DNA of 63,582 bases, counting the filler, from Reticulomyxa filosa (lineage: Eukaryota > Protista > Foraminifera), in the NCBI GenBank assembly GCA_000512085.1. It is 10 parts of 10 records of this genome, joined end to end, with 100 filler letters (N's around TTAATTAATTAA, not from the genome) between each part and the next. Parts side by side here need not be neighbours in the genome. Positions count along the whole stretch, not along the records: positions 1 to 22,137 come from ASPP01002699.1; 9 more parts are not named here. The stretch is one strand, 5' to 3'. Shown here piece after piece: positions 7,144-21,439 of this stretch. The translations under genes and the position numbers were made by a program. Numbering within the stretch: the first letter of the stretch is position 1; each line of letters opens with the position of its first letter. The notes beneath the pieces were generated by a model. It saw only the letters and a program-made list of their open reading frames with translations. It ran no database searches and was not told the origin of the DNA.

Positions 7144-8473
7144 TTAAGGCAAAGATCGCACGTTACTTATTTCGGCTTGAAGTTGTTCTTGTTGATATTT
7201 TTCAAATGACTTAAGCTTTCTTGGTGCCTTATGAAAACGTTGAGGAGTGTTTGAAAAGGGTTTTTGAAAAAGCCAATTTAAGGTGGCATAGCGACGAGGG
7301 GCTTCTCTTTGGGTTTGTCTCAACGTTTCTTGTGCCTTTCATCCAGATTATATATTGTTTAGTAAAGACTGTTAAAGGTAGAAAGTAAAAAAAAGATGAG
7401 AAAAAACGCACCAATTTAGGTGAGGACCATACAATATGTGCATTAGCCTGATTTTGCGAAGGGCTTGTTGGTAGTGTATATTTTGGGTCTAGTGGATTGA
7501 GATGACGATGAGTTCGAAACATTTTTTTAGTCCATGGTTGCGTTCCAGCAATGTCACTGATAAAATTGGGATCTTTTGGATTATCCCGCTTCCATTTGAT
7601 AGGGTTAGCAACTGCCCCTGCAACGTCGTCTGTTTTGAGAGACGTGAATATCTTGTTGTGACCTCGCATTCGTTCCGATTTGTTTGCCCGGGAACCCTCA
7701 ACTGGGCCAATGATATTGACACTAGCAATTGGTTTGGAGCCAATATTCTTTCCACGTGTAAGAGAAGTTTTTCGATAATTATCATATTGATATACCGGTT
7801 CTAGCGGATTTGTGCATCGAGAACTACGAAAATAATTGCATCCATTTTGATCATTATTGATATCACGCACATTCAATGAATTTTTCTGTTCGCATAGCCC
7901 AATTTTTTATTTTTCATTAATTAACAATACAAACAAACTCACTCCATAATATATATGTGGCAAACACATTTTGGGAGGATACACCAAACTAACGTTGGTG
8001 GACCACTTGCGATGGTTCATTTTCCATCCTGGACAAGATCCTTCTATATCCCCATGGTACATGATATTTTTGGATGTCTGACATTGGCTTTGTATTGATT
8101 TTTTAGGCTGGCAGCCCTCAATATCACTTATGTTTAGTGTATTTCGACCAGGTTTTGGAGGAGTGTTCAATCTCTGGTTCAATACACTCAATGGAACACT
8201 CGGATATTGATATACTGGCTCCAAAGGGTTTGTTTGCCGATTGCCAAAATGTCCTTTTGGTTTTGGATGTGCTCCTTCAATATCGCTGATATCATAGGCA
8301 TACTTAGGTTTGTTTGGAAATGATCGGCGCTTTAAGCATATATCGCCGGTCGTGAGGATTCGATTAGGATTTTTTTGCGGAAATTGCAGTGACCCTGTAC
8401 GATCTACTTTCATCACAAGATACTTTTTTATGTCTTTCAGTAATATTAAGATGCTTCCATGTAATACTTCCAA
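7144..8473 (-). CDS. multi-exon repeat protein with alternating (L)xxxDIEG(A/C)xP and TNPL(E/D)PxY motifs; start uncertain
   Basis: ORFs 7907-8473 and 7229-7876 contain DISDIEGAHPK, TNPLEPVYQYP, LNISDIEGCQPK, HGDIEGSCPGW, TNPLEPVYQY, KTDDVAGA, ISDIAGTQP and LNPLDPKY. A last exon ..QAEISNVRSLP* ends at 7144. Confidence 0.7.
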
Positions 8474-9070: not shown

Positions 9071-9821
9071 TTACAGCTTCCCAGCGTTGTGGGACTGAGT
9101 ATCCTTTTTCTCATCATCTTTGAAAAAGTTATCACGCTGAAATTCTTCATAAGGAGATTTGCCCAATGCTTCTTTGCCAATCTCAATGTCTTTGTTGATT
9201 GCAGCTATCAATTGTTCTTATATATACACAAATGCGACACAAGAGGAAAAAAAGGGGTTAATTAATAGTTTCTAAGATAAACCGTTTCTCAAAATGTGCA
9301 AGGAAAAAACAGAGGAAAGAAAAAAATTACCCAAAGAATCAAAGGCATATTGTGGACGAATAAATGCACAAATGAGTACACGCAGTTTGGAATCATAAAA
9401 ATCATCATCAAATTTGTGTAATAAATGGCATTCCTTTTTTTTTTTCCCCCACCCCAGATTGTTTGAAAATAAAAAAATGTATTGAAAGGGTTGGGACGTG
9501 TTGATTTTTTTTTAAGTGGATCAATCAATACAAAAGTATTTAGTTTTAAACTAGTTGCAAATTTTTGTTTTTGAAATGTGGGTTGTGCCCAATGGACAGT
9601 AATGTTTTGTAAACAGGACCGTTGTCCACGCACGCCCATCCAAAATACACCCCTTCACTTAATTTCTGAAATTCGTCGTTGTTTGCATAAGCCTGTGGGT
9701 CCAAGTTAGCTGTCGGTATTCCAATTTGTCTTCCCCTCTGATAGCCTTTCACAATGGCCCCTGCCAAACGCAATGGTTTCAATTTTTCAATACCCTTCCA
9801 ATAGTCTGGCAATCGAGACAT
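9071..9821 (-). CDS. RFK: riboflavin kinase (3 exons: 9821-9552, 9433-9331, 9216-9071)
   Basis: Motifs GxIVKGYQRGRQIGIPTANL, GVYFGWA, SIGHNPHF, ECHLLHKFDDDFYD, FIRPQ..FDSLEQLIAAINKDI. GT-AG introns keep the frame. Confidence 0.93.
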
Positions 9822-12800
9822 TTTTACAAACAACGTATAATTTCAAAATTTGTACAATTTAACCACCTTTCTTTTTTACTACTAGTTCACCATGTTTTTC
9901 TCAAGCTATATTTTCTAATAGATGCACAAATTTTATTCAAAAAATCTAATTAATTTGCATGTATTTGAAAGTATTTCATTAATAACACAGTCGCATGACG
10001 ATTTGAAATAAACAAAACTTCAGTCTTTTTTAACCTAATAATATACGGACATTTTTTGTTTGCATAAAATACATTTTCAGAAAAAATATTTGAAAATTTC
10101 GTAATTAGAAAAATTATTTATGTTCTGAATAGCAAAAGACCGTTAAAATAAATAAGAATTAAATGAAAAAAAGGAAAAAATACAATTAAAAGTAACAATA
10201 ACCATTTGAGAAATAACTGCACTTGAATATTCATAGTAATGGTACTTTGTGGGATCTCATTCTTTTGGCCAGTATTCCTGAATGATGTAAAGTTTTCCAA
10301 CTTCAATAGCAACTCTGGAAGCTTGATAATTCTTATAACTAAATAAATAATAAATACTTGCTTATTTATTTTTATGATATGAAAAAAAAAATTGAATTGT
10401 GTAAGAAAAAGAAATAATTATCAAAGTGTATTGAAGGATAATTTTTTCGGTTGTGCCATTCCGTTGTTCTAGAAAAAAAAAAAAAGAAACCACACCCTTT
10501 TAAAGCACACTTTTGACTGATTTTGTTAACATATTTTTCTGATGGAATTTATAGTGTTCATTTTTTCCTTTAAAGATAGCTCTGTTAAATATGTGTTTGT
10601 TTATTTCTTTTTTTTTAACGAACTTTTTTTTAGTTCAAAATGACAAAAATAGAAATTAAATATCCATATAACAAAAACTCTTTTTCGTACAACCACATTG
10701 TCCATTATTTACCAATTCAGGTATGTTGAAATATATTTACATTCAATGAATGTTGCAATCGCTTGTTTTCTTCTTTCACAATTTTATCGTCAAGTTTGAG
10801 CAAAACAAACAAAAACCCAAAAGAGCAAGCATGTATCAAAGCTTTATAGTTTGTTACGAAAATAAAAAAATTAAACTACACTATATCAAAATAAAATTAA
10901 TAAAAATAATTAATTAAAGCAAAGATAAATAGCCCAATATAATCCAATAAATGAATAAAAAAAGTATTACAAGAGTTTCTCAAAAAGGGCGTGGTTACAG
11001 ATTTTTTATTTTTTTATGTTGAATCATTCGTTTAATTCTTTATTTTCAAATTTTAAAAGAATAATCTTTTCATTCCAGGATCGTCGAAGAAATTTTCTGT
11101 ACAAAGGTATTTTTGATTGTTCAAAGAGACGATCATGGTATTTTTTCTTTAGTTGAAAATATTATTTGTTTAATTTAACAGCAACGTGATATTTACTTTT
11201 TCTTTTCCATAATCCAATTTTTTTTTGTACTTTTGTGCATTATCAATAATATCATTTTATGCTTTTTGGAAGAAATCATAGATGTAATTTTTTGACTTAT
11301 TATTTGGAACAGTTGTGTTGTTTGTAGATCTCAGAAAAATCATTTACAATGATATGAGTTTGTTCTTTATATTCCATAAATGCCATTTAAATCCTTTTAA
11401 ATATTTCATATTCCATATGTGTCCCTTTGGGGGACTTTTGCGTTATTCAAAATCTACTTTGCAACCAAAATGGTAGAAATGATAAATTATCTACAAATAT
11501 GAATGCCAAGTAATATTATGAAAAAAACTGCATAGTACATTGAGATAACCAGACAATTGAATAACTATCTGTTCTTTACAAAATAAATTAAATATTATAT
11601 CAAACAATACATCATTCTACTGATAATTAGATTAACCAAGAGAATCACAAATTGAGATGACAGATAATAATAGAATTTCTTTTACATGAATATATTCACA
11701 CTTTTTTTAGTTGATCAAGACCAAACGTGATAAAGACAACACAGATGCTATTGTAATTAATTCTACTTCTAAAGTTGTGCGCATTAACTTCACAACAACT
11801 GTCTTCACTTTACTGTACAGCTCCATGACAGAAAAAAACTGGAACTACGTTCCCCTACAATTAAAAAAAAACGTCAATTTTTCTTTTGTAATTGCGTTTC
11901 CAAATGGAATAATTATGCAATGAATTAAGCTGGAAAAAGACTACGTATATGACATATAGATTGTTTTTACAAAAAGTTGTATTCGTTTAAAAAACGTTTA
12001 GAAAGGTGGCATATTTTTTTTTTGAAGAATTTTTCTTTATCATGTGAACAATGTTTTTTCCAACTTGGTAGAGTCTCGTGCCCAATGATGTCTGGGAAAA
12101 GTGGATGCAAACACTGCAACATAAGTAAAGGTAACCTTGAACACTCGAAGAATTAAGTACAAAAGTAAAGGAATACTGGAAACATTTGTGAATCGAATAT
12201 TTATATTGGAATTATTGTTAACATTATTTACAGTAATAATGTCAGTATTTCATGTAAATCCTTATTTATTGCGAGTGATAATAGTTAAAAGTGATTAACG
12301 TGCAAACCAACTTGCTGCAATGACAGCCTTTTTAATTGCACGTTATCTTCGGCAACTATTATAGTATTTTGATGGATATTAAGTTCTAATATTGGTTTAC
12401 TTACTACTATTCTAATTCCTTGAATAATTGTCTTAATTGAAGTTATCACTTTCATTTTTGTTGCTTCCATTTGTACTTTATATCATTGGACTGATAATTA
12501 TTTCTCTTTTGTTATGTTCATCAATGTTTATCTTTATTTTGGAATCAACAACAATATTTATATTTATCTGCTTCTAAATTAAAAAATAATGATTAGTCTC
12601 ACAACAATTTGAAAACATTTATCGTTTTCTTTTCAACACTTTCTTGTTATTGATGATGTGAGAAAATATTTGACAAATTAGAAATATATTTTTACAAAAT
12701 ATTCAATTACTTTGTGATACTAAACAAATTAATCAAATATATAATAATCTATTATTCACACAGCGTCTGCTGTAATTTCGCTTTGACCAAAAAAAAAGTT

Positions 12801-13502: not shown

Positions 13503-14523
13503 ATGTCCGATATGGTTGAATCTTTAAGAAATAAGAAATTGATAGTGATTGGATTGATGAGTGGGACATCAATGGATGGAATTGATTGTGCACTTTTACA
13601 AACAGTTTTTTTTTTTCACAACATGCAATCAAAATGAAACAACTAAGCCAAGCCAAGACAAAACAAAACCAAACAAAAAAAAAAGGACGGGGAAACAATA
13701 AAGTTACAACAACCAAATTATTATGAATGCTATGAGTACAGCCGAGAGTTTAAAGAGCGGTTGAAAAAGATATTGGGAAAGACGAATCGAACAGAGGAAT
13801 TGACAAGTGTGGAAACCGAGCTGACAAGACAGCACATGGAAGCAGTGAAGAAATTTCTGAGAAAGTATAGGTTATCAATGGACGACATCGATTTGATATC
13901 ATTTCATGGACACACGATATATCACGAATCCAAAGATAACATGAGCAAAGCCGAAAAAAAACCCCACGAGATACCGTCAGACGTGATAATAGGGCGCAAT
14001 TGCGCATCTTGGCAAATCGGAAACGGTGCACTTTTATCGAAGTTGACAGGGAAGCCAGTGGTGTATAATTTGAGGAAAAATGACATTGTGCACGGCGGAC
14101 AGGGTTGTCCATTGGTGCCATTGTATCACGCGGCCATTGCAAAGTATGTAAAACAGGACCACCCAATGGCATTCACATTTCCGGTTGTATTTGTGAACAT
14201 TGGCGGAGTTGCCAATGTTACATATGTGGACGTGACCACGGACAAGGAAAAGGGTTCCATCCAAACATTGATTGCGTTTGATTGCGGGCCTGGCAATGCC
14301 ATCTTGGACGACTTTGTGACCCAAGTGAGTGGCAATCGACACTCCTTCGATCCCAACGGCTTGCTTTATTGCTACAAAGGCATCCACGATATACGTTTCG
14401 ATGTCGTTAACAAGTTTCTGCAACACAAGTTTACTACCAACAATTTATCATCACAAGGCTTGCCAAAGTCTTTAGATCGTAATCAATGGCATTCATTTAT
14501 TTTTAATCTTTTAAAAAATTATG

Positions 14524-14556
<33 letters not shown>

Positions 14557-14935
14557 TTTATGCACAAGCAGCTACAATTGCAGAATGCACTGTTCAATCC
14601 ATTGTTCATAGTGTAGATTACTTTGGACTTGCAAAGGAAATCAAACCCATTCCCAAAACTTGGCTCTTGTGTGGCGGAGGACGGCACAACCGCTTCTTCA
14701 AAGAACGCATTCACACCGTTTTGAACGACAAGTACTCACCGCTGCTTCGCGACATCTCGGTACTTAACATTGACGACTTTGGGCTCAATGGGGATGCCGT
14801 CGAGGCACAGTGCTGGGCTTCTTAGGAGCTCGAGCCGTCAATCGCTTACACTTGAGTCTTCCCACCACTACCACTGTTCCCTCTCCTGTCACTGGAGGAG
14901 TCTTTGCTTTCCCTTCTTCCAATGCAAAACTTTAA
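13503..14935 (+). CDS. anmK: anhydro-N-acetylmuramic acid kinase (AnmK/levoglucosan kinase family); exon 1 13503-13604, exon 2 13686-14935 with a 1-nt frameshift at ~14820
   Basis: Exon 1 IVIGLMSGTSMDGIDCALLQT is spliced to DGETI. Internal motifs: FHGHT, GGQGCPLVP, NIGGVANVT, AFDCGPGNAILD, PKSLDR, CGGGRHN, GDAVEAQ. The conserved tail (F)LGARAVNRLHLSLPTTTTVPSPVTGG lies in the shifted frame and ends ..NAKL*. Confidence 0.93.
14526..14555 (+). repeat. (AAT)10 coding microsatellite, poly-Asn insertion inside anmK
   Basis: Direct reading: YD-N10-VY. Confidence 0.9.
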
Positions 14936-15326: not shown

Positions 15327-16272
15327 TTAATCCAACAAAAACATTCTCGACGCAATATCTTTGACTAACCAGTCCACTCCCTCTCTTAACCCCTTGCCTG
15401 TGACCGCACTGCAAGCTTGAACATAGTAATGTCTGGACTTTTCCAATTTTTTCAACTCCAAAGTTTCGACAATGTCCTTGACATCAAGAGCGCCACTCAA
15501 ATCTTGTTTGTTGGCAAGTATTAACAAAGTCGCGCCTGCCAATCTCTATTTCACACACATACGTATGCATTTGGTTTATTGCATTGATATGTGTTTCTTT
15601 TTTTTAAAAAAAAAAAGGAACGGAGCGGAAACAAAAAAAATCATAATTGAAATTGTTTGAATCTATTCCGATAATTGCATTTTTTGTATTAGCATTGAAT
15701 GAAAGGATTATATTTAACTTCCTCTTGCAACAAACTGTGCAACTCTTTTTTGCACAGAGCCAATCTTCGTTTGTCGGCACTGTCAATCACCCAAATCACA
15801 CCATCAGTCGCCTCAAAATAATTTTTCCAATAAGATCGTATGGTTTGTTGTCCACCAACGTCCCAAATGTTCAATTTGTAACTTTATTTATTTTTGTTTG
15901 TTCAACAAAAAAAAAGGGGGCAAAAGCACGAAAGAACTTTTCTTTTTGCTGATGAAACAAATAAAAAAAAACAAGTTGACGGTTTATATGTTAATCTGCT
16001 GCAAAAAAAAGAATACAGTGGATGTCACTTACTCAGAATATTCTAATGTGCGGATGGTGAAACCCAAGGTGGGCGCAATCTTGGTTATGTCTTCACCGTT
16101 AAACCGCATGACTACTGTCGTTTTGCCTGCGTTATCTAAACCTCTACGCCAAACACAATCGTGTTTGCACTAAATGGGAATGAAATAAAGCAAAACCAAA
16201 CACTTACAGCATCAATATTCGCATTTCCTTCTCTTTTCTTTTCAATTTTTTCAAAATAGCCAACAGACCCAT
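15327..16272 (-). CDS. ARL2: ADP-ribosylation factor-like GTPase 2 (4 exons: 16272-16208, 16143-16033, 15881-15719, 15545-15327)
   Basis: [96 protein letters not shown]. These are ARL2-diagnostic sequences. Confidence 0.96.
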
Positions 16273-20421: not shown

Positions 20422-21439
20422 ATGGTTCACAATGATAAATACCTTGCACTATATATACTCTCTCCAACCCAAGCACTGCTACTATGCAGTATTTTGGCAA
20501 TATTGTTGGTAGCTTCCTTGTATATCTGGGCACTTGCGGGCTATGAAGTTAGCAATCGCAACGATCCAACAGTGATCAAGCAAAGATTTATAAGTGTGGT
20601 TGTGTGGTGTTTGATATGTCCAATAATTATCGCGCAATACGTGCACGTGGTGGATCCGCATTTGATCCATCGAAACGGAATAATCAAAGACAAAGTGAAA
20701 AACCCATTAACGCAAGATACAGGATTTATAGACACATTACTGTCCATGGTATTTTGGGAAAGTTTAGGGGTCCGTTTGGACATAGCTCACAACATTAAGT
20801 CAGTGTTGGTAAGCATTGGATTAAATCTCCTTTGGTTTTACGGACCATTGGTCGAGGATTGGCAGTACGTGTTGATTCATCAACACAAAGACACACCACC
20901 ATTACACGTCATCCGAGGGTTCATCATTGGACCTGCTGCTGAAGAATGGATTTATCGATGTTGCATATGTTCGGTGTTATTAAATTCCGGTAATTTCTAT
21001 TTTTTTTTTATTATTATAAAAATTATCTTTTTTTTTTTTTAAAAAAAAAAATGATAAAGGATTTAATCAAGCGTTCTCAATAATCATATCCCCGATATTA
21101 TTTGGACTATCTCATGCACATCACTTTTATTATCAATACTCCACGGTGCACGCGGCAGAAGAGAAAAATATCCGCAAAATATTTTTATCGGTATTGCTTC
21201 AGTTGACTTACACAAGCATTTTTGGTGGGGTCGCTGCTATTATCTTTGCCAAAACAAGAAATTGCTTTGCTCCTGTTGTCATGCACGCCATGTGTAATTA
21301 CATGAGTCTCCCACGATTTAGTTGGGTGCGTTTCAAATCTCAGAAAGATTACTTGAATTGTGCCGCCTACGTCTTTGGCTTATTCTCATTTCTTTTTCTT
21401 TTGTTCAGTCTTGATCCTCGCACTTTTAGCGGTGTTTAA
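20422..21439 (+). CDS. RCE1: CAAX prenyl protease 2 (2 exons: 20422-20989, 21060-21439)
   Basis: Multi-TM protein with RNDPTVIKQRF, GPAAEEWIYRCC, FGLSHAHH, QLTYTSIFG and HAMCNYMSLP, the Rce1 catalytic E/H/H motifs. Confidence 0.92.

What the first reader, a model, noticed from the sequence alone, without database searches (positions are those of the whole stretch)
13503..14935. Bacterial peptidoglycan-recycling kinase AnmK naturalised in a protist genome
Seen: a full set of AnmK motifs, a spliceosomal intron (13605-13685), a host-style poly-Asn tract, and eukaryotic neighbours (RFK, ARL2) on the same contig, which argues against contamination. Established: AnmK converts 1,6-anhydro-MurNAc to MurNAc-6-P in bacterial cell-wall recycling, and the best-known eukaryotic relatives are fungal levoglucosan kinases. 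The TDGE, PKSLDR and CGGGRHN motifs look more like alphaproteobacterial AnmK than the fungal PKTTGRE type. Inference: a horizontally acquired pathway for salvaging cell-wall sugars of bacterial prey.
Basis: partly seen in the sequence, partly recalled or inferred. Interest (0 to 1): 0.8.

Follow-up and report, generated by a model that had tools for sequence, protein, structure and literature searches.

The report
Bacterial-type AnmK kinase gene in Foraminifera
The freshwater foraminiferan Reticulomyxa filosa carries, between ordinary eukaryotic genes, an alphaproteobacterial-type anhydro-N-acetylmuramic acid kinase gene that it shares with at least one other foraminiferan; this adds a case to a known kind of bacteria-to-eukaryote gene transfer, and the copy in this assembly has a one-base frameshift.

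Summary
Window 13503-14935 (+) encodes an AnmK-family kinase (PF03702, E 4.5e-39). It has one GT-AG intron (13605-13685), an (AAT)10 poly-Asn tract, and intron-split Arf/ARL2-like, riboflavin-kinase and Rce1-like genes as neighbours.

The contig is Reticulomyxa filosa. The gene is already deposited as RFI_02801, which UniRef names AnmK.

It puts TAG at 14823-25 and shifts the last 40 conserved codons into the -1 frame. Reads could not be consulted, so assembly error and recent pseudogene remain open.

The closest relatives are a Bolivina argentea (foraminiferan) transcript and three metagenomic proteins, two of them on contigs with eukaryote-like neighbours. They form one clade (SH-aLRT 99) and share an insertion after FHGQTIYH. 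That clade belongs to the alphaproteobacterial AnmK subtype (NF007141), but the donor is unresolved. The transfer therefore probably predates the Reticulomyxa-Bolivina split.

All nine PaAnmK catalytic and ligand-contact residues checked are retained.

A prey cell-wall salvage role is plausible but inferred. MurQ and the other pathway genes could not be searched. AnmK transfers into ticks, rotifers, ciliates and fungi are already published, so this is a new member of a known kind, of moderate interest.

The parts
13503..13604 (+). AnmK exon 1 (34 codons). It holds the GLMSGTSMDGID phosphate-binding motif, equivalent to PaAnmK S12 and D14.
   Evidence: It matches NF007141 positions 4-25 and aligns to 3qbw_A residues 5-22.
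13605..13685 (+). Spliceosomal intron, GT...AG, 81 nt, 28% GC, with an in-frame stop inside. The GenBank model uses an earlier acceptor (AG 13651-52) and so adds 11 residues that no relative has.
   Evidence: It is inferred from homology and not verified by RNA.
13686..14822 (+). AnmK exon 2 up to the frameshift (379 codons). It carries FHGHTIYH (T97), YNLRKND (R129), NIGGVAN (N168), FDCGPGN (D182), ILDD (D191), SFDPNG (F202), PKSLDRN, CGGGRHN and GDAVEAQ (E326).
14526..14555 (+). (AAT)10 microsatellite encoding Asn x10. It lies in a loop that is variable and low-complexity in the orthologues.
14817..14825 (+). Frameshift site. The sequence gct-tct-TAG reads A-S-stop in the exon 2 frame, whereas all relatives read W-A-F/Y-L. 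One base is missing at about 14818-14820.
14819..14935 (+). C-terminal segment in the -1 frame (FLGARAVNRLHLSLPTTTTVPSPVTGGVFAFPSSNAKL, then TAA at 14933-35). It is as conserved as the rest of the protein.
   Evidence: NF007141 positions 335-367, E 7e-6; 39-49% identity to orthologues, against 40-43% for exon 2.
15327..15871 (-). Context: the downstream neighbour, an Arf-family (ARL2-like) gene in at least two exons (15327-15539 and 15689-15871).
9546..9830 (-). Context: an upstream riboflavin kinase (Flavokinase) exon.

Best explanation
This is the Reticulomyxa filosa copy of a foraminiferal AnmK-family anhydrosugar kinase gene. An alphaproteobacterial-type anmK was transferred into a foraminiferal ancestor before Reticulomyxa (a monothalamid) and Bolivina (a rotaliid) diverged, and has been inherited vertically since.

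It has become a host gene. It has host-like base composition, loop insertions shared by the clade, lineage-specific low-complexity tracts and, in Reticulomyxa only, one spliceosomal intron.

The encoded enzyme most likely still does what bacterial AnmK does. In the cytosol it uses ATP and an Asp-activated water to open the 1,6-anhydro ring of anhMurNAc and phosphorylate O6, giving MurNAc-6-phosphate. The inferred role is to feed cell-wall amino sugar from phagocytosed bacteria into GlcNAc-6-P metabolism.

Shown: family, fold of the orthologue, retained active-site residues, genomic integration and the clade with other eukaryote sequences. Inferred: substrate, physiological role, and that the one-base frameshift in this assembly is an error or a very recent lesion rather than old decay.
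For: - Family and completeness of the three pieces.
- Identity of the contig and of the deposited protein RFI_02801.
- A full-library HMMER search finds only four proteins above the bacterial background: Bolivina argentea EukProt P0121 (E 1.5e-65), P0122 (1.7e-61), P0002 (7.6e-57) and the fragment P0125. The bacterial background starts at 1e-42.
- The P0122 and P0002 contigs carry eukaryote-type or low-complexity neighbours: HMG box, V-ATPase subunit e, a Kelch protein and poly-N inserts.
- The clade has SH-aLRT 99 in two trees. Its internal order (Reticulomyxa,(P0002,(Bolivina,P0122))) is compatible with the species tree.
- A shared insertion after FHGQTIYH ends in the conserved xVIxG[KR]NxxxWQIG. 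Those columns were not used in the trees.
- Alphaproteobacterial subtype: NF007141 is the best model for the foraminiferal proteins (317-320 bits against 227-234 for the next). It is also the model that named Alphaproteobacteria hit at 470-517 bits, while E. coli prefers NF007138.
- PaAnmK residues S12, D14, T97, R129, N168, D182, D191, F202 and E326 are all retained.
- The orthologue model has pLDDT 92.9. Its TM-score is 0.87-0.89 to solved AnmK structures and 0.75 to LGK.
- GC and GC3 (0.42 / 0.47) lie within the range of neighbouring host exons.
- The segment after the frameshift is as conserved as the rest and ends at the homologous C-terminus.
Against: - In this assembly the reading frame is broken 40 codons before the end. 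The lost part holds nearly invariant residues (R413, T425, T426 and G435 in Bolivina numbering). If the lesion is real, the Reticulomyxa protein is probably inactive.
- There is no expression or read evidence.
- No foraminiferal protein reaches the NCBIfam equivalog cut-off: 317-320 bits, and about 297 for the three Reticulomyxa pieces summed, against 352.
- The clade-specific insertion begins about five residues after the T97 equivalent, which contacts the N-acetyl group, so specificity may have changed.
- T97 and R129 are also present in LGK, so they do not discriminate between substrates.
- The tick precedent retained only weak anhMurNAc activity.
- No downstream enzyme (MurQ) was shown.
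- The position among alphaproteobacterial AnmKs is a polytomy, and amino-acid composition bias was flagged.
Confidence: 0.6

Rival explanations
1. The gene is a recent pseudogene in Reticulomyxa. The one-base deletion is real and the truncated product lacks the conserved C-terminal helix and strand, so it is inactive. Other foraminifera keep a working copy.
For: The frameshift and premature TAG are in the deposited sequence and in the deposited protein model, which ends ...AQCWAS. The lost segment contains nearly invariant family positions.
Against: Nothing else is damaged. There are 413 intact codons upstream, all catalytic residues are kept, and the 40 codons after the shift are open, end at the homologous position and are as conserved as exon 2. 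The deficit lies in a short T run (gcTTc where gcNTTc is expected), a plausible base-calling or assembly slip. The assembly is described as highly fragmented.
Confidence: 0.3
2. The foraminiferal enzyme has changed function. It keeps the anhydrosugar-kinase chemistry but acts on a different substrate (levoglucosan, another 1,6-anhydro sugar or an anhydro-muropeptide), or it serves host-bacterium interactions such as endobiont control or removal of muropeptide signals rather than nutrition.
For: The clade scores below the equivalog cut-off of every AnmK model. It has a conserved clade-specific insertion next to the sugar pocket and replaces DFR with YNLR. Tick AnmK, another domesticated copy, is about 500-fold less active on anhMurNAc and has a reproductive role.
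Against: [quoted passage not shown] The protein is far closer to alphaproteobacterial AnmK than to LGK. The insertion has low model confidence and looks like a surface loop. YN[FL]R also occurs in Pelagibacter AnmK.
Confidence: 0.25
3. The gene is not a later transfer. It descends from the mitochondrial (alphaproteobacterial) endosymbiont, was retained in Foraminifera and was lost from almost all other eukaryotes.
For: It is of alphaproteobacterial subtype. In the reduced tree the clade sits in the basal polytomy of that subtype and not inside a specific modern order. In the larger tree it falls with Rickettsiales, Pelagibacterales and SAR116.
Against: The full-library search found no other eukaryote-like sequence between the foraminiferal clade and bacteria. 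Published eukaryotic AnmKs trace to other donors: Chitinophagaceae for ticks and rotifers, and CPR bacteria and others for ciliates. This reading needs very many independent losses. The grouping with AT-rich bacteria may be a composition artefact (warnings).
Confidence: 0.07
4. The gene is bacterial contamination, or the contig is a chimeric assembly.
For: None beyond the bacterial affinity of the protein. Reads could not be inspected.
Against: The best bacterial identity is only 31-37%. The gene needs a GT-AG intron to be read. It has an (AAT)10 tract and AT-rich flanks of 23-34% GC typical of the contig. Intron-split eukaryotic genes lie about 400 bp downstream and on both sides. Orthologues occur in a foraminiferal transcriptome and on two independent contigs with eukaryote-like neighbours.
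Confidence: 0.02

Closest known systems
Alphaproteobacterial AnmK (NCBIfam NF007141 / PRK09585.1-5; Pfam PF03702), for example from Rickettsiales, Rhodospirillales, Micavibrio and Pelagibacterales
   Same: It has the same domain over its full length and the same subtype signatures (TDG, PPKSLDRN, CGGGRHN). All catalytic and ligand residues are kept. Identity is 31-43%.
   Different: It is encoded in a eukaryotic nucleus with an intron. It has a 12-40-residue insertion after FHGQTIYH and further low-complexity loops. It scores below the equivalog cut-off. There is no operon or recycling context.
Pseudomonas aeruginosa AnmK (PDB 3QBW/3QBX/4MO4/8CPB) and Shewanella SO_1313 (3CQY)
   Same: The fold matches (orthologue model TM-score 0.87-0.89). 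S12, D14, T97, R129, N168, D182, D191, F202 and E326 are conserved.
   Different: These are gammaproteobacterial subtypes. Sequence identity is about 24-28%, and their motifs are PKSTGRE and GGGxxN.
Fungal levoglucosan kinase (Lipomyces starkeyi LGK, PDB 4YH5/4ZLU) and fungal AnmK-like kinases
   Same: They belong to the same superfamily and use the same chemistry. They are also eukaryotic, and also have an enlarged loop after HGQT.
   Different: They are much more distant (E 1e-16 to 1e-13, TM-score 0.75) and have the PKTCGRE motif. They are not the source of the foraminiferal gene.
Horizontally acquired anmK of ticks and bdelloid rotifers (bioRxiv 10.64898/2026.03.13.711553), of anaerobic ciliates (PMC13198582), and AnmK listed in Naegleria (PMC9928731)
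   Same: A bacterial anmK became fixed in a eukaryotic lineage, gained introns and shifted codon use towards the host. For the ciliates and Naegleria the proposed role is use of bacterial peptidoglycan.
   Different: The donors differ (Chitinophagaceae; CPR bacteria and others) and the events are independent. The foraminiferal clade is of alphaproteobacterial type. The ciliates also acquired murQ and NamZ, which could not be checked here.

Membership tests
AnmK / anhydrosugar kinase family (Pfam PF03702) | Domain match above the gathering score, covering the whole domain | tested here: met
   Exon 2 scores 135 bits against a cut-off of 24. The three pieces tile NF007141 at 4-25, 26-335 and 335-367.
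AnmK / anhydrosugar kinase family (Pfam PF03702) | Two-lobed ASKHA-type fold, as in solved AnmK structures | tested here: met
   Tested on the intact orthologue P0121, not on the Reticulomyxa protein, because its pieces were not joined. pLDDT is 92.9, pTM 0.92, and TM-score 0.87-0.89 to 3CQY, 3QBX and 8CP9.
AnmK / anhydrosugar kinase family (Pfam PF03702) | Catalytic base Asp (Pa D182) and the ATP/Mg ligands (S12, D14, D191, F202, E326) | tested here: met
   FDCGPGN, SGTSMDG, ILDD, SFDPNG and GDAVEAQ are all present.
Bona fide anhMurNAc kinase (EC 2.7.1.170) | Residues contacting the N-acetyl and lactyl-carboxylate groups and the sugar (Pa T97, R129, N168) | tested here: met
   HGHT, YNLR and GGVAN are present. 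Caveat: T97 and R129 are also present in LGK, so this does not prove specificity.
Bona fide anhMurNAc kinase (EC 2.7.1.170) | Score above an NCBIfam AnmK equivalog cut-off | tested here: not met
   The best model is NF007141. The Reticulomyxa pieces score 240.9 + 30.6 + 25.1 bits and the intact orthologues 273-320 bits, against a cut-off of 352.
Bona fide anhMurNAc kinase (EC 2.7.1.170) | Uninterrupted reading frame | tested here: not met
   There is a one-base frameshift at about 14818-14820 and a TAG at 14823-25 in this assembly. Whether it is real is unknown.
Bona fide anhMurNAc kinase (EC 2.7.1.170) | Conversion of anhMurNAc plus ATP to MurNAc-6-P | not testable with these tools
   This needs an enzyme assay.
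Levoglucosan kinase (fungal LGK) | Closer to LGK than to AnmK, with LGK-type motifs (PKTCGRE) | tested here: not met
   LGK scores E 3.6e-16 to 1e-13, against 2.6e-48 for alphaproteobacterial AnmK. The motif here is PKSLDRN. TM-score is 0.75 to LGK and 0.87-0.89 to AnmK.
Peptidoglycan amino-sugar salvage pathway (AnmK, MurQ, NagA/NagB, with NagZ/NamZ/amidase upstream) | Presence of MurQ and the other pathway enzymes in the same genome | not testable with these tools
   The window's genome is not held. No such gene lies in the 22-kb window or beside the orthologues.
Prokaryote-to-eukaryote horizontal gene transfer | Nearest non-self relatives are bacterial, the gene is physically linked to host genes, and it shows host-like gene features | tested here: met
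   The intron is inferred from homology only.
Prokaryote-to-eukaryote horizontal gene transfer | Strongly supported nesting inside a specific donor group | tested here: inconclusive
   The subtype is alphaproteobacterial, but the sister group is unresolved (open forks), composition bias was flagged, and E. coli was the only outgroup.

The most novel reading that the evidence does not exclude
AnmK was fixed at or near the base of Foraminifera and has been kept for hundreds of millions of years, with a conserved clade-specific loop inserted next to the sugar-binding threonine. The most novel reading is that this marks a changed substrate or role: processing anhydro-muropeptide fragments to manage bacterial endobionts or prey signals, rather than simple nutrition. 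It would be a foraminiferal parallel to the tick case.
Probability: 0.15. Interest if true: 0.6.

Novelty: new member of a known kind. Interest (0 to 1): 0.4.

Why it matters
Foraminifera are major bacterivores and sediment recyclers, and many live with bacterial endobionts. A stably inherited bacterial cell-wall-sugar kinase would show that they metabolise a peptidoglycan-specific compound in their own cytosol. It would also add an independent, ancient instance to the recurrent capture of anmK by eukaryotes (ticks, rotifers, ciliates, fungi, possibly Naegleria). That recurrence suggests 1,6-anhydro-MurNAc is a widely exploited resource or signal.

There are two practical corrections to the deposited model RFI_02801. 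Its splice acceptor is probably wrong, adding 11 spurious residues. Its C-terminus is cut off by a frameshift.

Tried and rejected
The frameshift, the splice site and expression remain untested, and no other route to reads was tried.
- The spliced, frame-corrected protein was deliberately not assembled or searched. All searches used exon 1, exon 2 and the C-terminal piece separately.
- The profile word search with the foraminiferal alignment and the JGI metagenome scan gave only bacterial AnmKs of 37% identity or less, and no further members of the eukaryote clade.
- The third word search, on the DMT_YdcZ neighbour of the TARA orthologue, was meant to name that organism. It returned one unnamed paralogue and was uninformative.
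- Other foraminiferal orthologues that are 50-90% identical to P0121 would be hidden by the 50% clustering of the representative library, so they could not be enumerated.
- The C-terminal piece against PDB gave only a chance match to haemoglobin alpha.
- The 'careful' tree did not finish, so only SH-aLRT supports are available.
- Bacik et al. 2015 on LGK specificity is not held.
- Considered and rejected for the frame break:
  - A second intron. There is no room, because the orthologues align without a gap across the break.
  - Stop-codon reassignment. The downstream exon 2 frame is non-homologous and soon hits TGA.
  - Programmed -1 frameshifting. There is no slippery heptamer at G-GCT-TCT.
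- The guess that ORFs 7229-8473(-) are sperm-tail PG-rich repeat proteins got no Pfam support.
Full report
**What is in the sequence.** Window 13503-14935 (+) holds three collinear pieces of one AnmK-family gene.

- Exon 1 is 13503-13604 (34 codons, MSDMVESLRNKKLIVIGLMSGTSMDGIDCALLQT).
- It is followed by GT at 13605-06, and the frame hits a stop at 13635-37.
- After AG at 13684-85 the frame reopens as DGETIKLQ... and runs 379 codons to 14822.

Pfam PF03702 matches exon 2 at E 4.5e-39. NCBIfam NF007141 matches exon 1 at profile positions 4-25 and exon 2 at 26-335, so the two abut exactly. The orthologues also read T-DG without a gap across the junction.

The deposited protein (P0001 = RFI_02801, 424 aa, Reticulomyxa filosa) uses an earlier acceptor at AG 13651-52. 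It therefore carries an 11-residue insert, PRQNKTKQKKK, that no relative has.

The poly-Asn tract is ten AAT codons at 14526-14555.

The exon 2 frame ends ...GDAVEAQCWAS-TAG at 14823-25. The family's conserved C-terminus (FLGARAVNRLHLSLPTTTTVPSPVTGGVF...) continues in the -1 frame to TAA at 14933-35.

- It matches NF007141 positions 335-367, exactly where exon 2 stops.
- All relatives read W-A-F/Y-L across the break with no gap.
- One base is therefore missing in g-c-t-t-c at about 14818-14820.
- The 40 codons after the break are 39-49% identical to the orthologues, against 40-43% for exon 2. A random 41-codon frame of this composition stays open only about 8% of the time.

The lesion is thus either an assembly or base-calling error or a very recent one. 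The deposited protein model is truncated at this point.

**Genomic setting.** The contig is eukaryotic on both sides of the gene.

- Arf-family (ARL2-like) exons lie at 15327-15539 and 15689-15871 (-), about 400 bp downstream.
- A Flavokinase exon lies at 9546-9830 (-).
- An Rce1-like CAAX protease lies in two exons at 20422-21436 (+).
- Flanks and intron are 23-34% GC. AnmK coding GC/GC3 is 0.42/0.47, inside the range of the neighbouring host exons (0.33-0.44 / 0.24-0.48; ARL2 exon 0.43/0.48).

Contamination or a chimera is very unlikely, although read pairing was not checked.

**Relatives.** The word-index search returned about 8,000 AnmKs. The best bacterial ones are 31-37% identical, and every named one is alphaproteobacterial or Micavibrio/Pseudobdellovibrionaceae. 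The named genome scan gave the same picture.

The exhaustive HMMER search of 1.84 billion representatives found four proteins well above the bacterial background:

- P0121 (E 1.5e-65)
- P0122 (1.7e-61)
- P0002 (7.6e-57)
- the fragment P0125

The bacterial background begins at 1e-42.

P0121 is EukProt EP01084, Bolivina argentea, a rotaliid foraminiferan. P0122 lies on an ENA contig between a V-ATPase subunit e gene, a Kelch protein and an HMG-box protein. P0002 lies on two assemblies of a TARA sample, next to N-rich low-complexity proteins. Both of those genes are single uninterrupted ORFs, so the Reticulomyxa intron is lineage-specific.

All five share an insertion of roughly 12-40 residues after FHGQTIYH that ends in a conserved xVIxG[KR]NxxxWQIG. 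They also have YNLR where most bacteria have DFR.

**Trees.**

- In a 114-row tree (LG+C20+F+G4 PMSF, quick search) the five eukaryote rows form one clade (SH-aLRT 99, stem 0.38). The clade lies inside a weakly supported set of Rickettsiales, SAR116, Pelagibacterales and unnamed rows.
- In a 60-row tree the four full-length rows again form a clade (99), ordered (Reticulomyxa,(P0002,(Bolivina,P0122))). That clade sits in the basal polytomy of the alphaproteobacterial-type sequences.
- Composition heterogeneity was flagged, the careful search did not finish, and E. coli was the only distant outgroup. The donor is therefore unresolved.

Independent support for the subtype comes from NCBIfam. Among 14 AnmK models the foraminiferal proteins prefer NF007141 by about 90 bits. 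NF007141 is the model that Rickettsiaceae, Rhodospirillales, Azospirillum, Oryzicola and Pseudobdellovibrionaceae AnmKs hit at 474-517 bits, whereas E. coli AnmK prefers NF007138.

**Function.** I used the residue list for P. aeruginosa AnmK given in the tick preprint and the numbered PDB alignments. S12, D14, T97, R129, N168, D182 (the catalytic base), D191 and F202 are all conserved in the Reticulomyxa pieces. The E326 equivalent is present in GDAVEAQ.

An AlphaFold model of the intact Bolivina orthologue is confident (pLDDT 92.9). It superposes on solved AnmKs at target TM-score 0.87-0.89 and on LGK at 0.75. The clade-specific insertion is the least confident stretch. By sequence, LGK is about 30 orders of magnitude more distant than alphaproteobacterial AnmK.

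The chemistry is therefore almost certainly ATP-dependent opening and 6-phosphorylation of a 1,6-anhydro sugar, and anhMurNAc is the most likely substrate. There are four cautions:

- No foraminiferal member reaches an equivalog cut-off.
- T97 and R129 also occur in LGK.
- The new loop begins about five residues after T97.
- The domesticated tick enzyme is only weakly active on anhMurNAc.

The physiological reading is salvage of amino sugar from phagocytosed bacteria. The substrate would come from glycan-strand 1,6-anhydro ends or from prey lytic-transglycosylase products, which is established knowledge of peptidoglycan structure. This reading is inference. The next enzyme, MurQ, and the upstream hydrolases could not be searched, because the genome is not available to the tools. 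None lies in the window or next to the orthologues.

**Comparison with what is known.** AnmK capture by eukaryotes is already documented:

- Ticks and rotifers acquired it from Chitinophagaceae. The tick gene has gained an intron and ameliorated codon use, and the enzyme has weak activity.
- Anaerobic ciliates acquired it together with murQ and NamZ, explicitly proposed as a peptidoglycan-degradation route.
- Naegleria gene lists include it.
- Fungi have both AnmK-like kinases and LGK.

The Reticulomyxa protein itself is in NCBI, and UniRef labels it AnmK. I found no paper in the searchable library that mentions AnmK or N-acetylmuramic acid together with Reticulomyxa or Rhizaria. The Rhizaria LGT preprint does not mention it in its main text.

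New in this report are the foraminiferal clade, its alphaproteobacterial subtype, the shared insertion, and the two defects of the deposited model. This is a new member of a known kind.

**Limits.**

- There is no read, expression or whole-genome evidence.
- Trees carry SH-aLRT support only.
- The organisms behind P0002, P0122 and P0125 are inferred to be foraminifera only from the gene tree and the eukaryote-like neighbours.
- Further foraminiferal orthologues may be hidden by database clustering.

Noticed in passing
window 13605-13685, compared with the GenBank model: The deposited model RFI_02801 splices to AG 13651-52 and so contains 11 residues (PRQNKTKQKKK) absent from every relative. 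The acceptor at 13684-85 fits homology better.
   Followed up: yes
L001:3762-5108 (-) and L198:1684-3114: Next to the TARA AnmK orthologue lies a duplicated DMT_YdcZ (PF04657, a bacterial-type inner-membrane exporter family) protein with poly-Asn inserts. A 64%-identical paralogue sits on another scaffold of the same sample. It may be another gene of bacterial origin in that eukaryote.
   Followed up: partly
window 7229-8473 (-): Two long ORFs carry repeated NPL[ED]P.Y / DI[EA]G motifs and have no Pfam match. This is an unidentified repeat protein gene, probably split by an intron.
   Followed up: partly
L001:1614-3518 and L003:2325-3584: The marine orthologues are intronless single ORFs. P0002 has a roughly 90-residue N-terminal extension (if its GTG start is real) and several very long N/K/D-rich loop insertions at the same loops where Reticulomyxa has smaller ones.
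   Followed up: partly
window 14810-14932: The short C-terminal piece gives a chance PDB hit to haemoglobin alpha (LSFPTTKT against LSLPTTTT). It is meaningless, but it shows how short fragments can mislead.
   Followed up: yes
L006, L007, L012, L013, L015, L024, L026: Several of the nearest bacterial AnmKs come from Micavibrio and 'Pseudobdellovibrionaceae' (predatory bacteria) and from Rickettsiales (intracellular bacteria). Both lifestyles bring bacteria into close contact with protists, but no specific donor link is supported.
   Followed up: no
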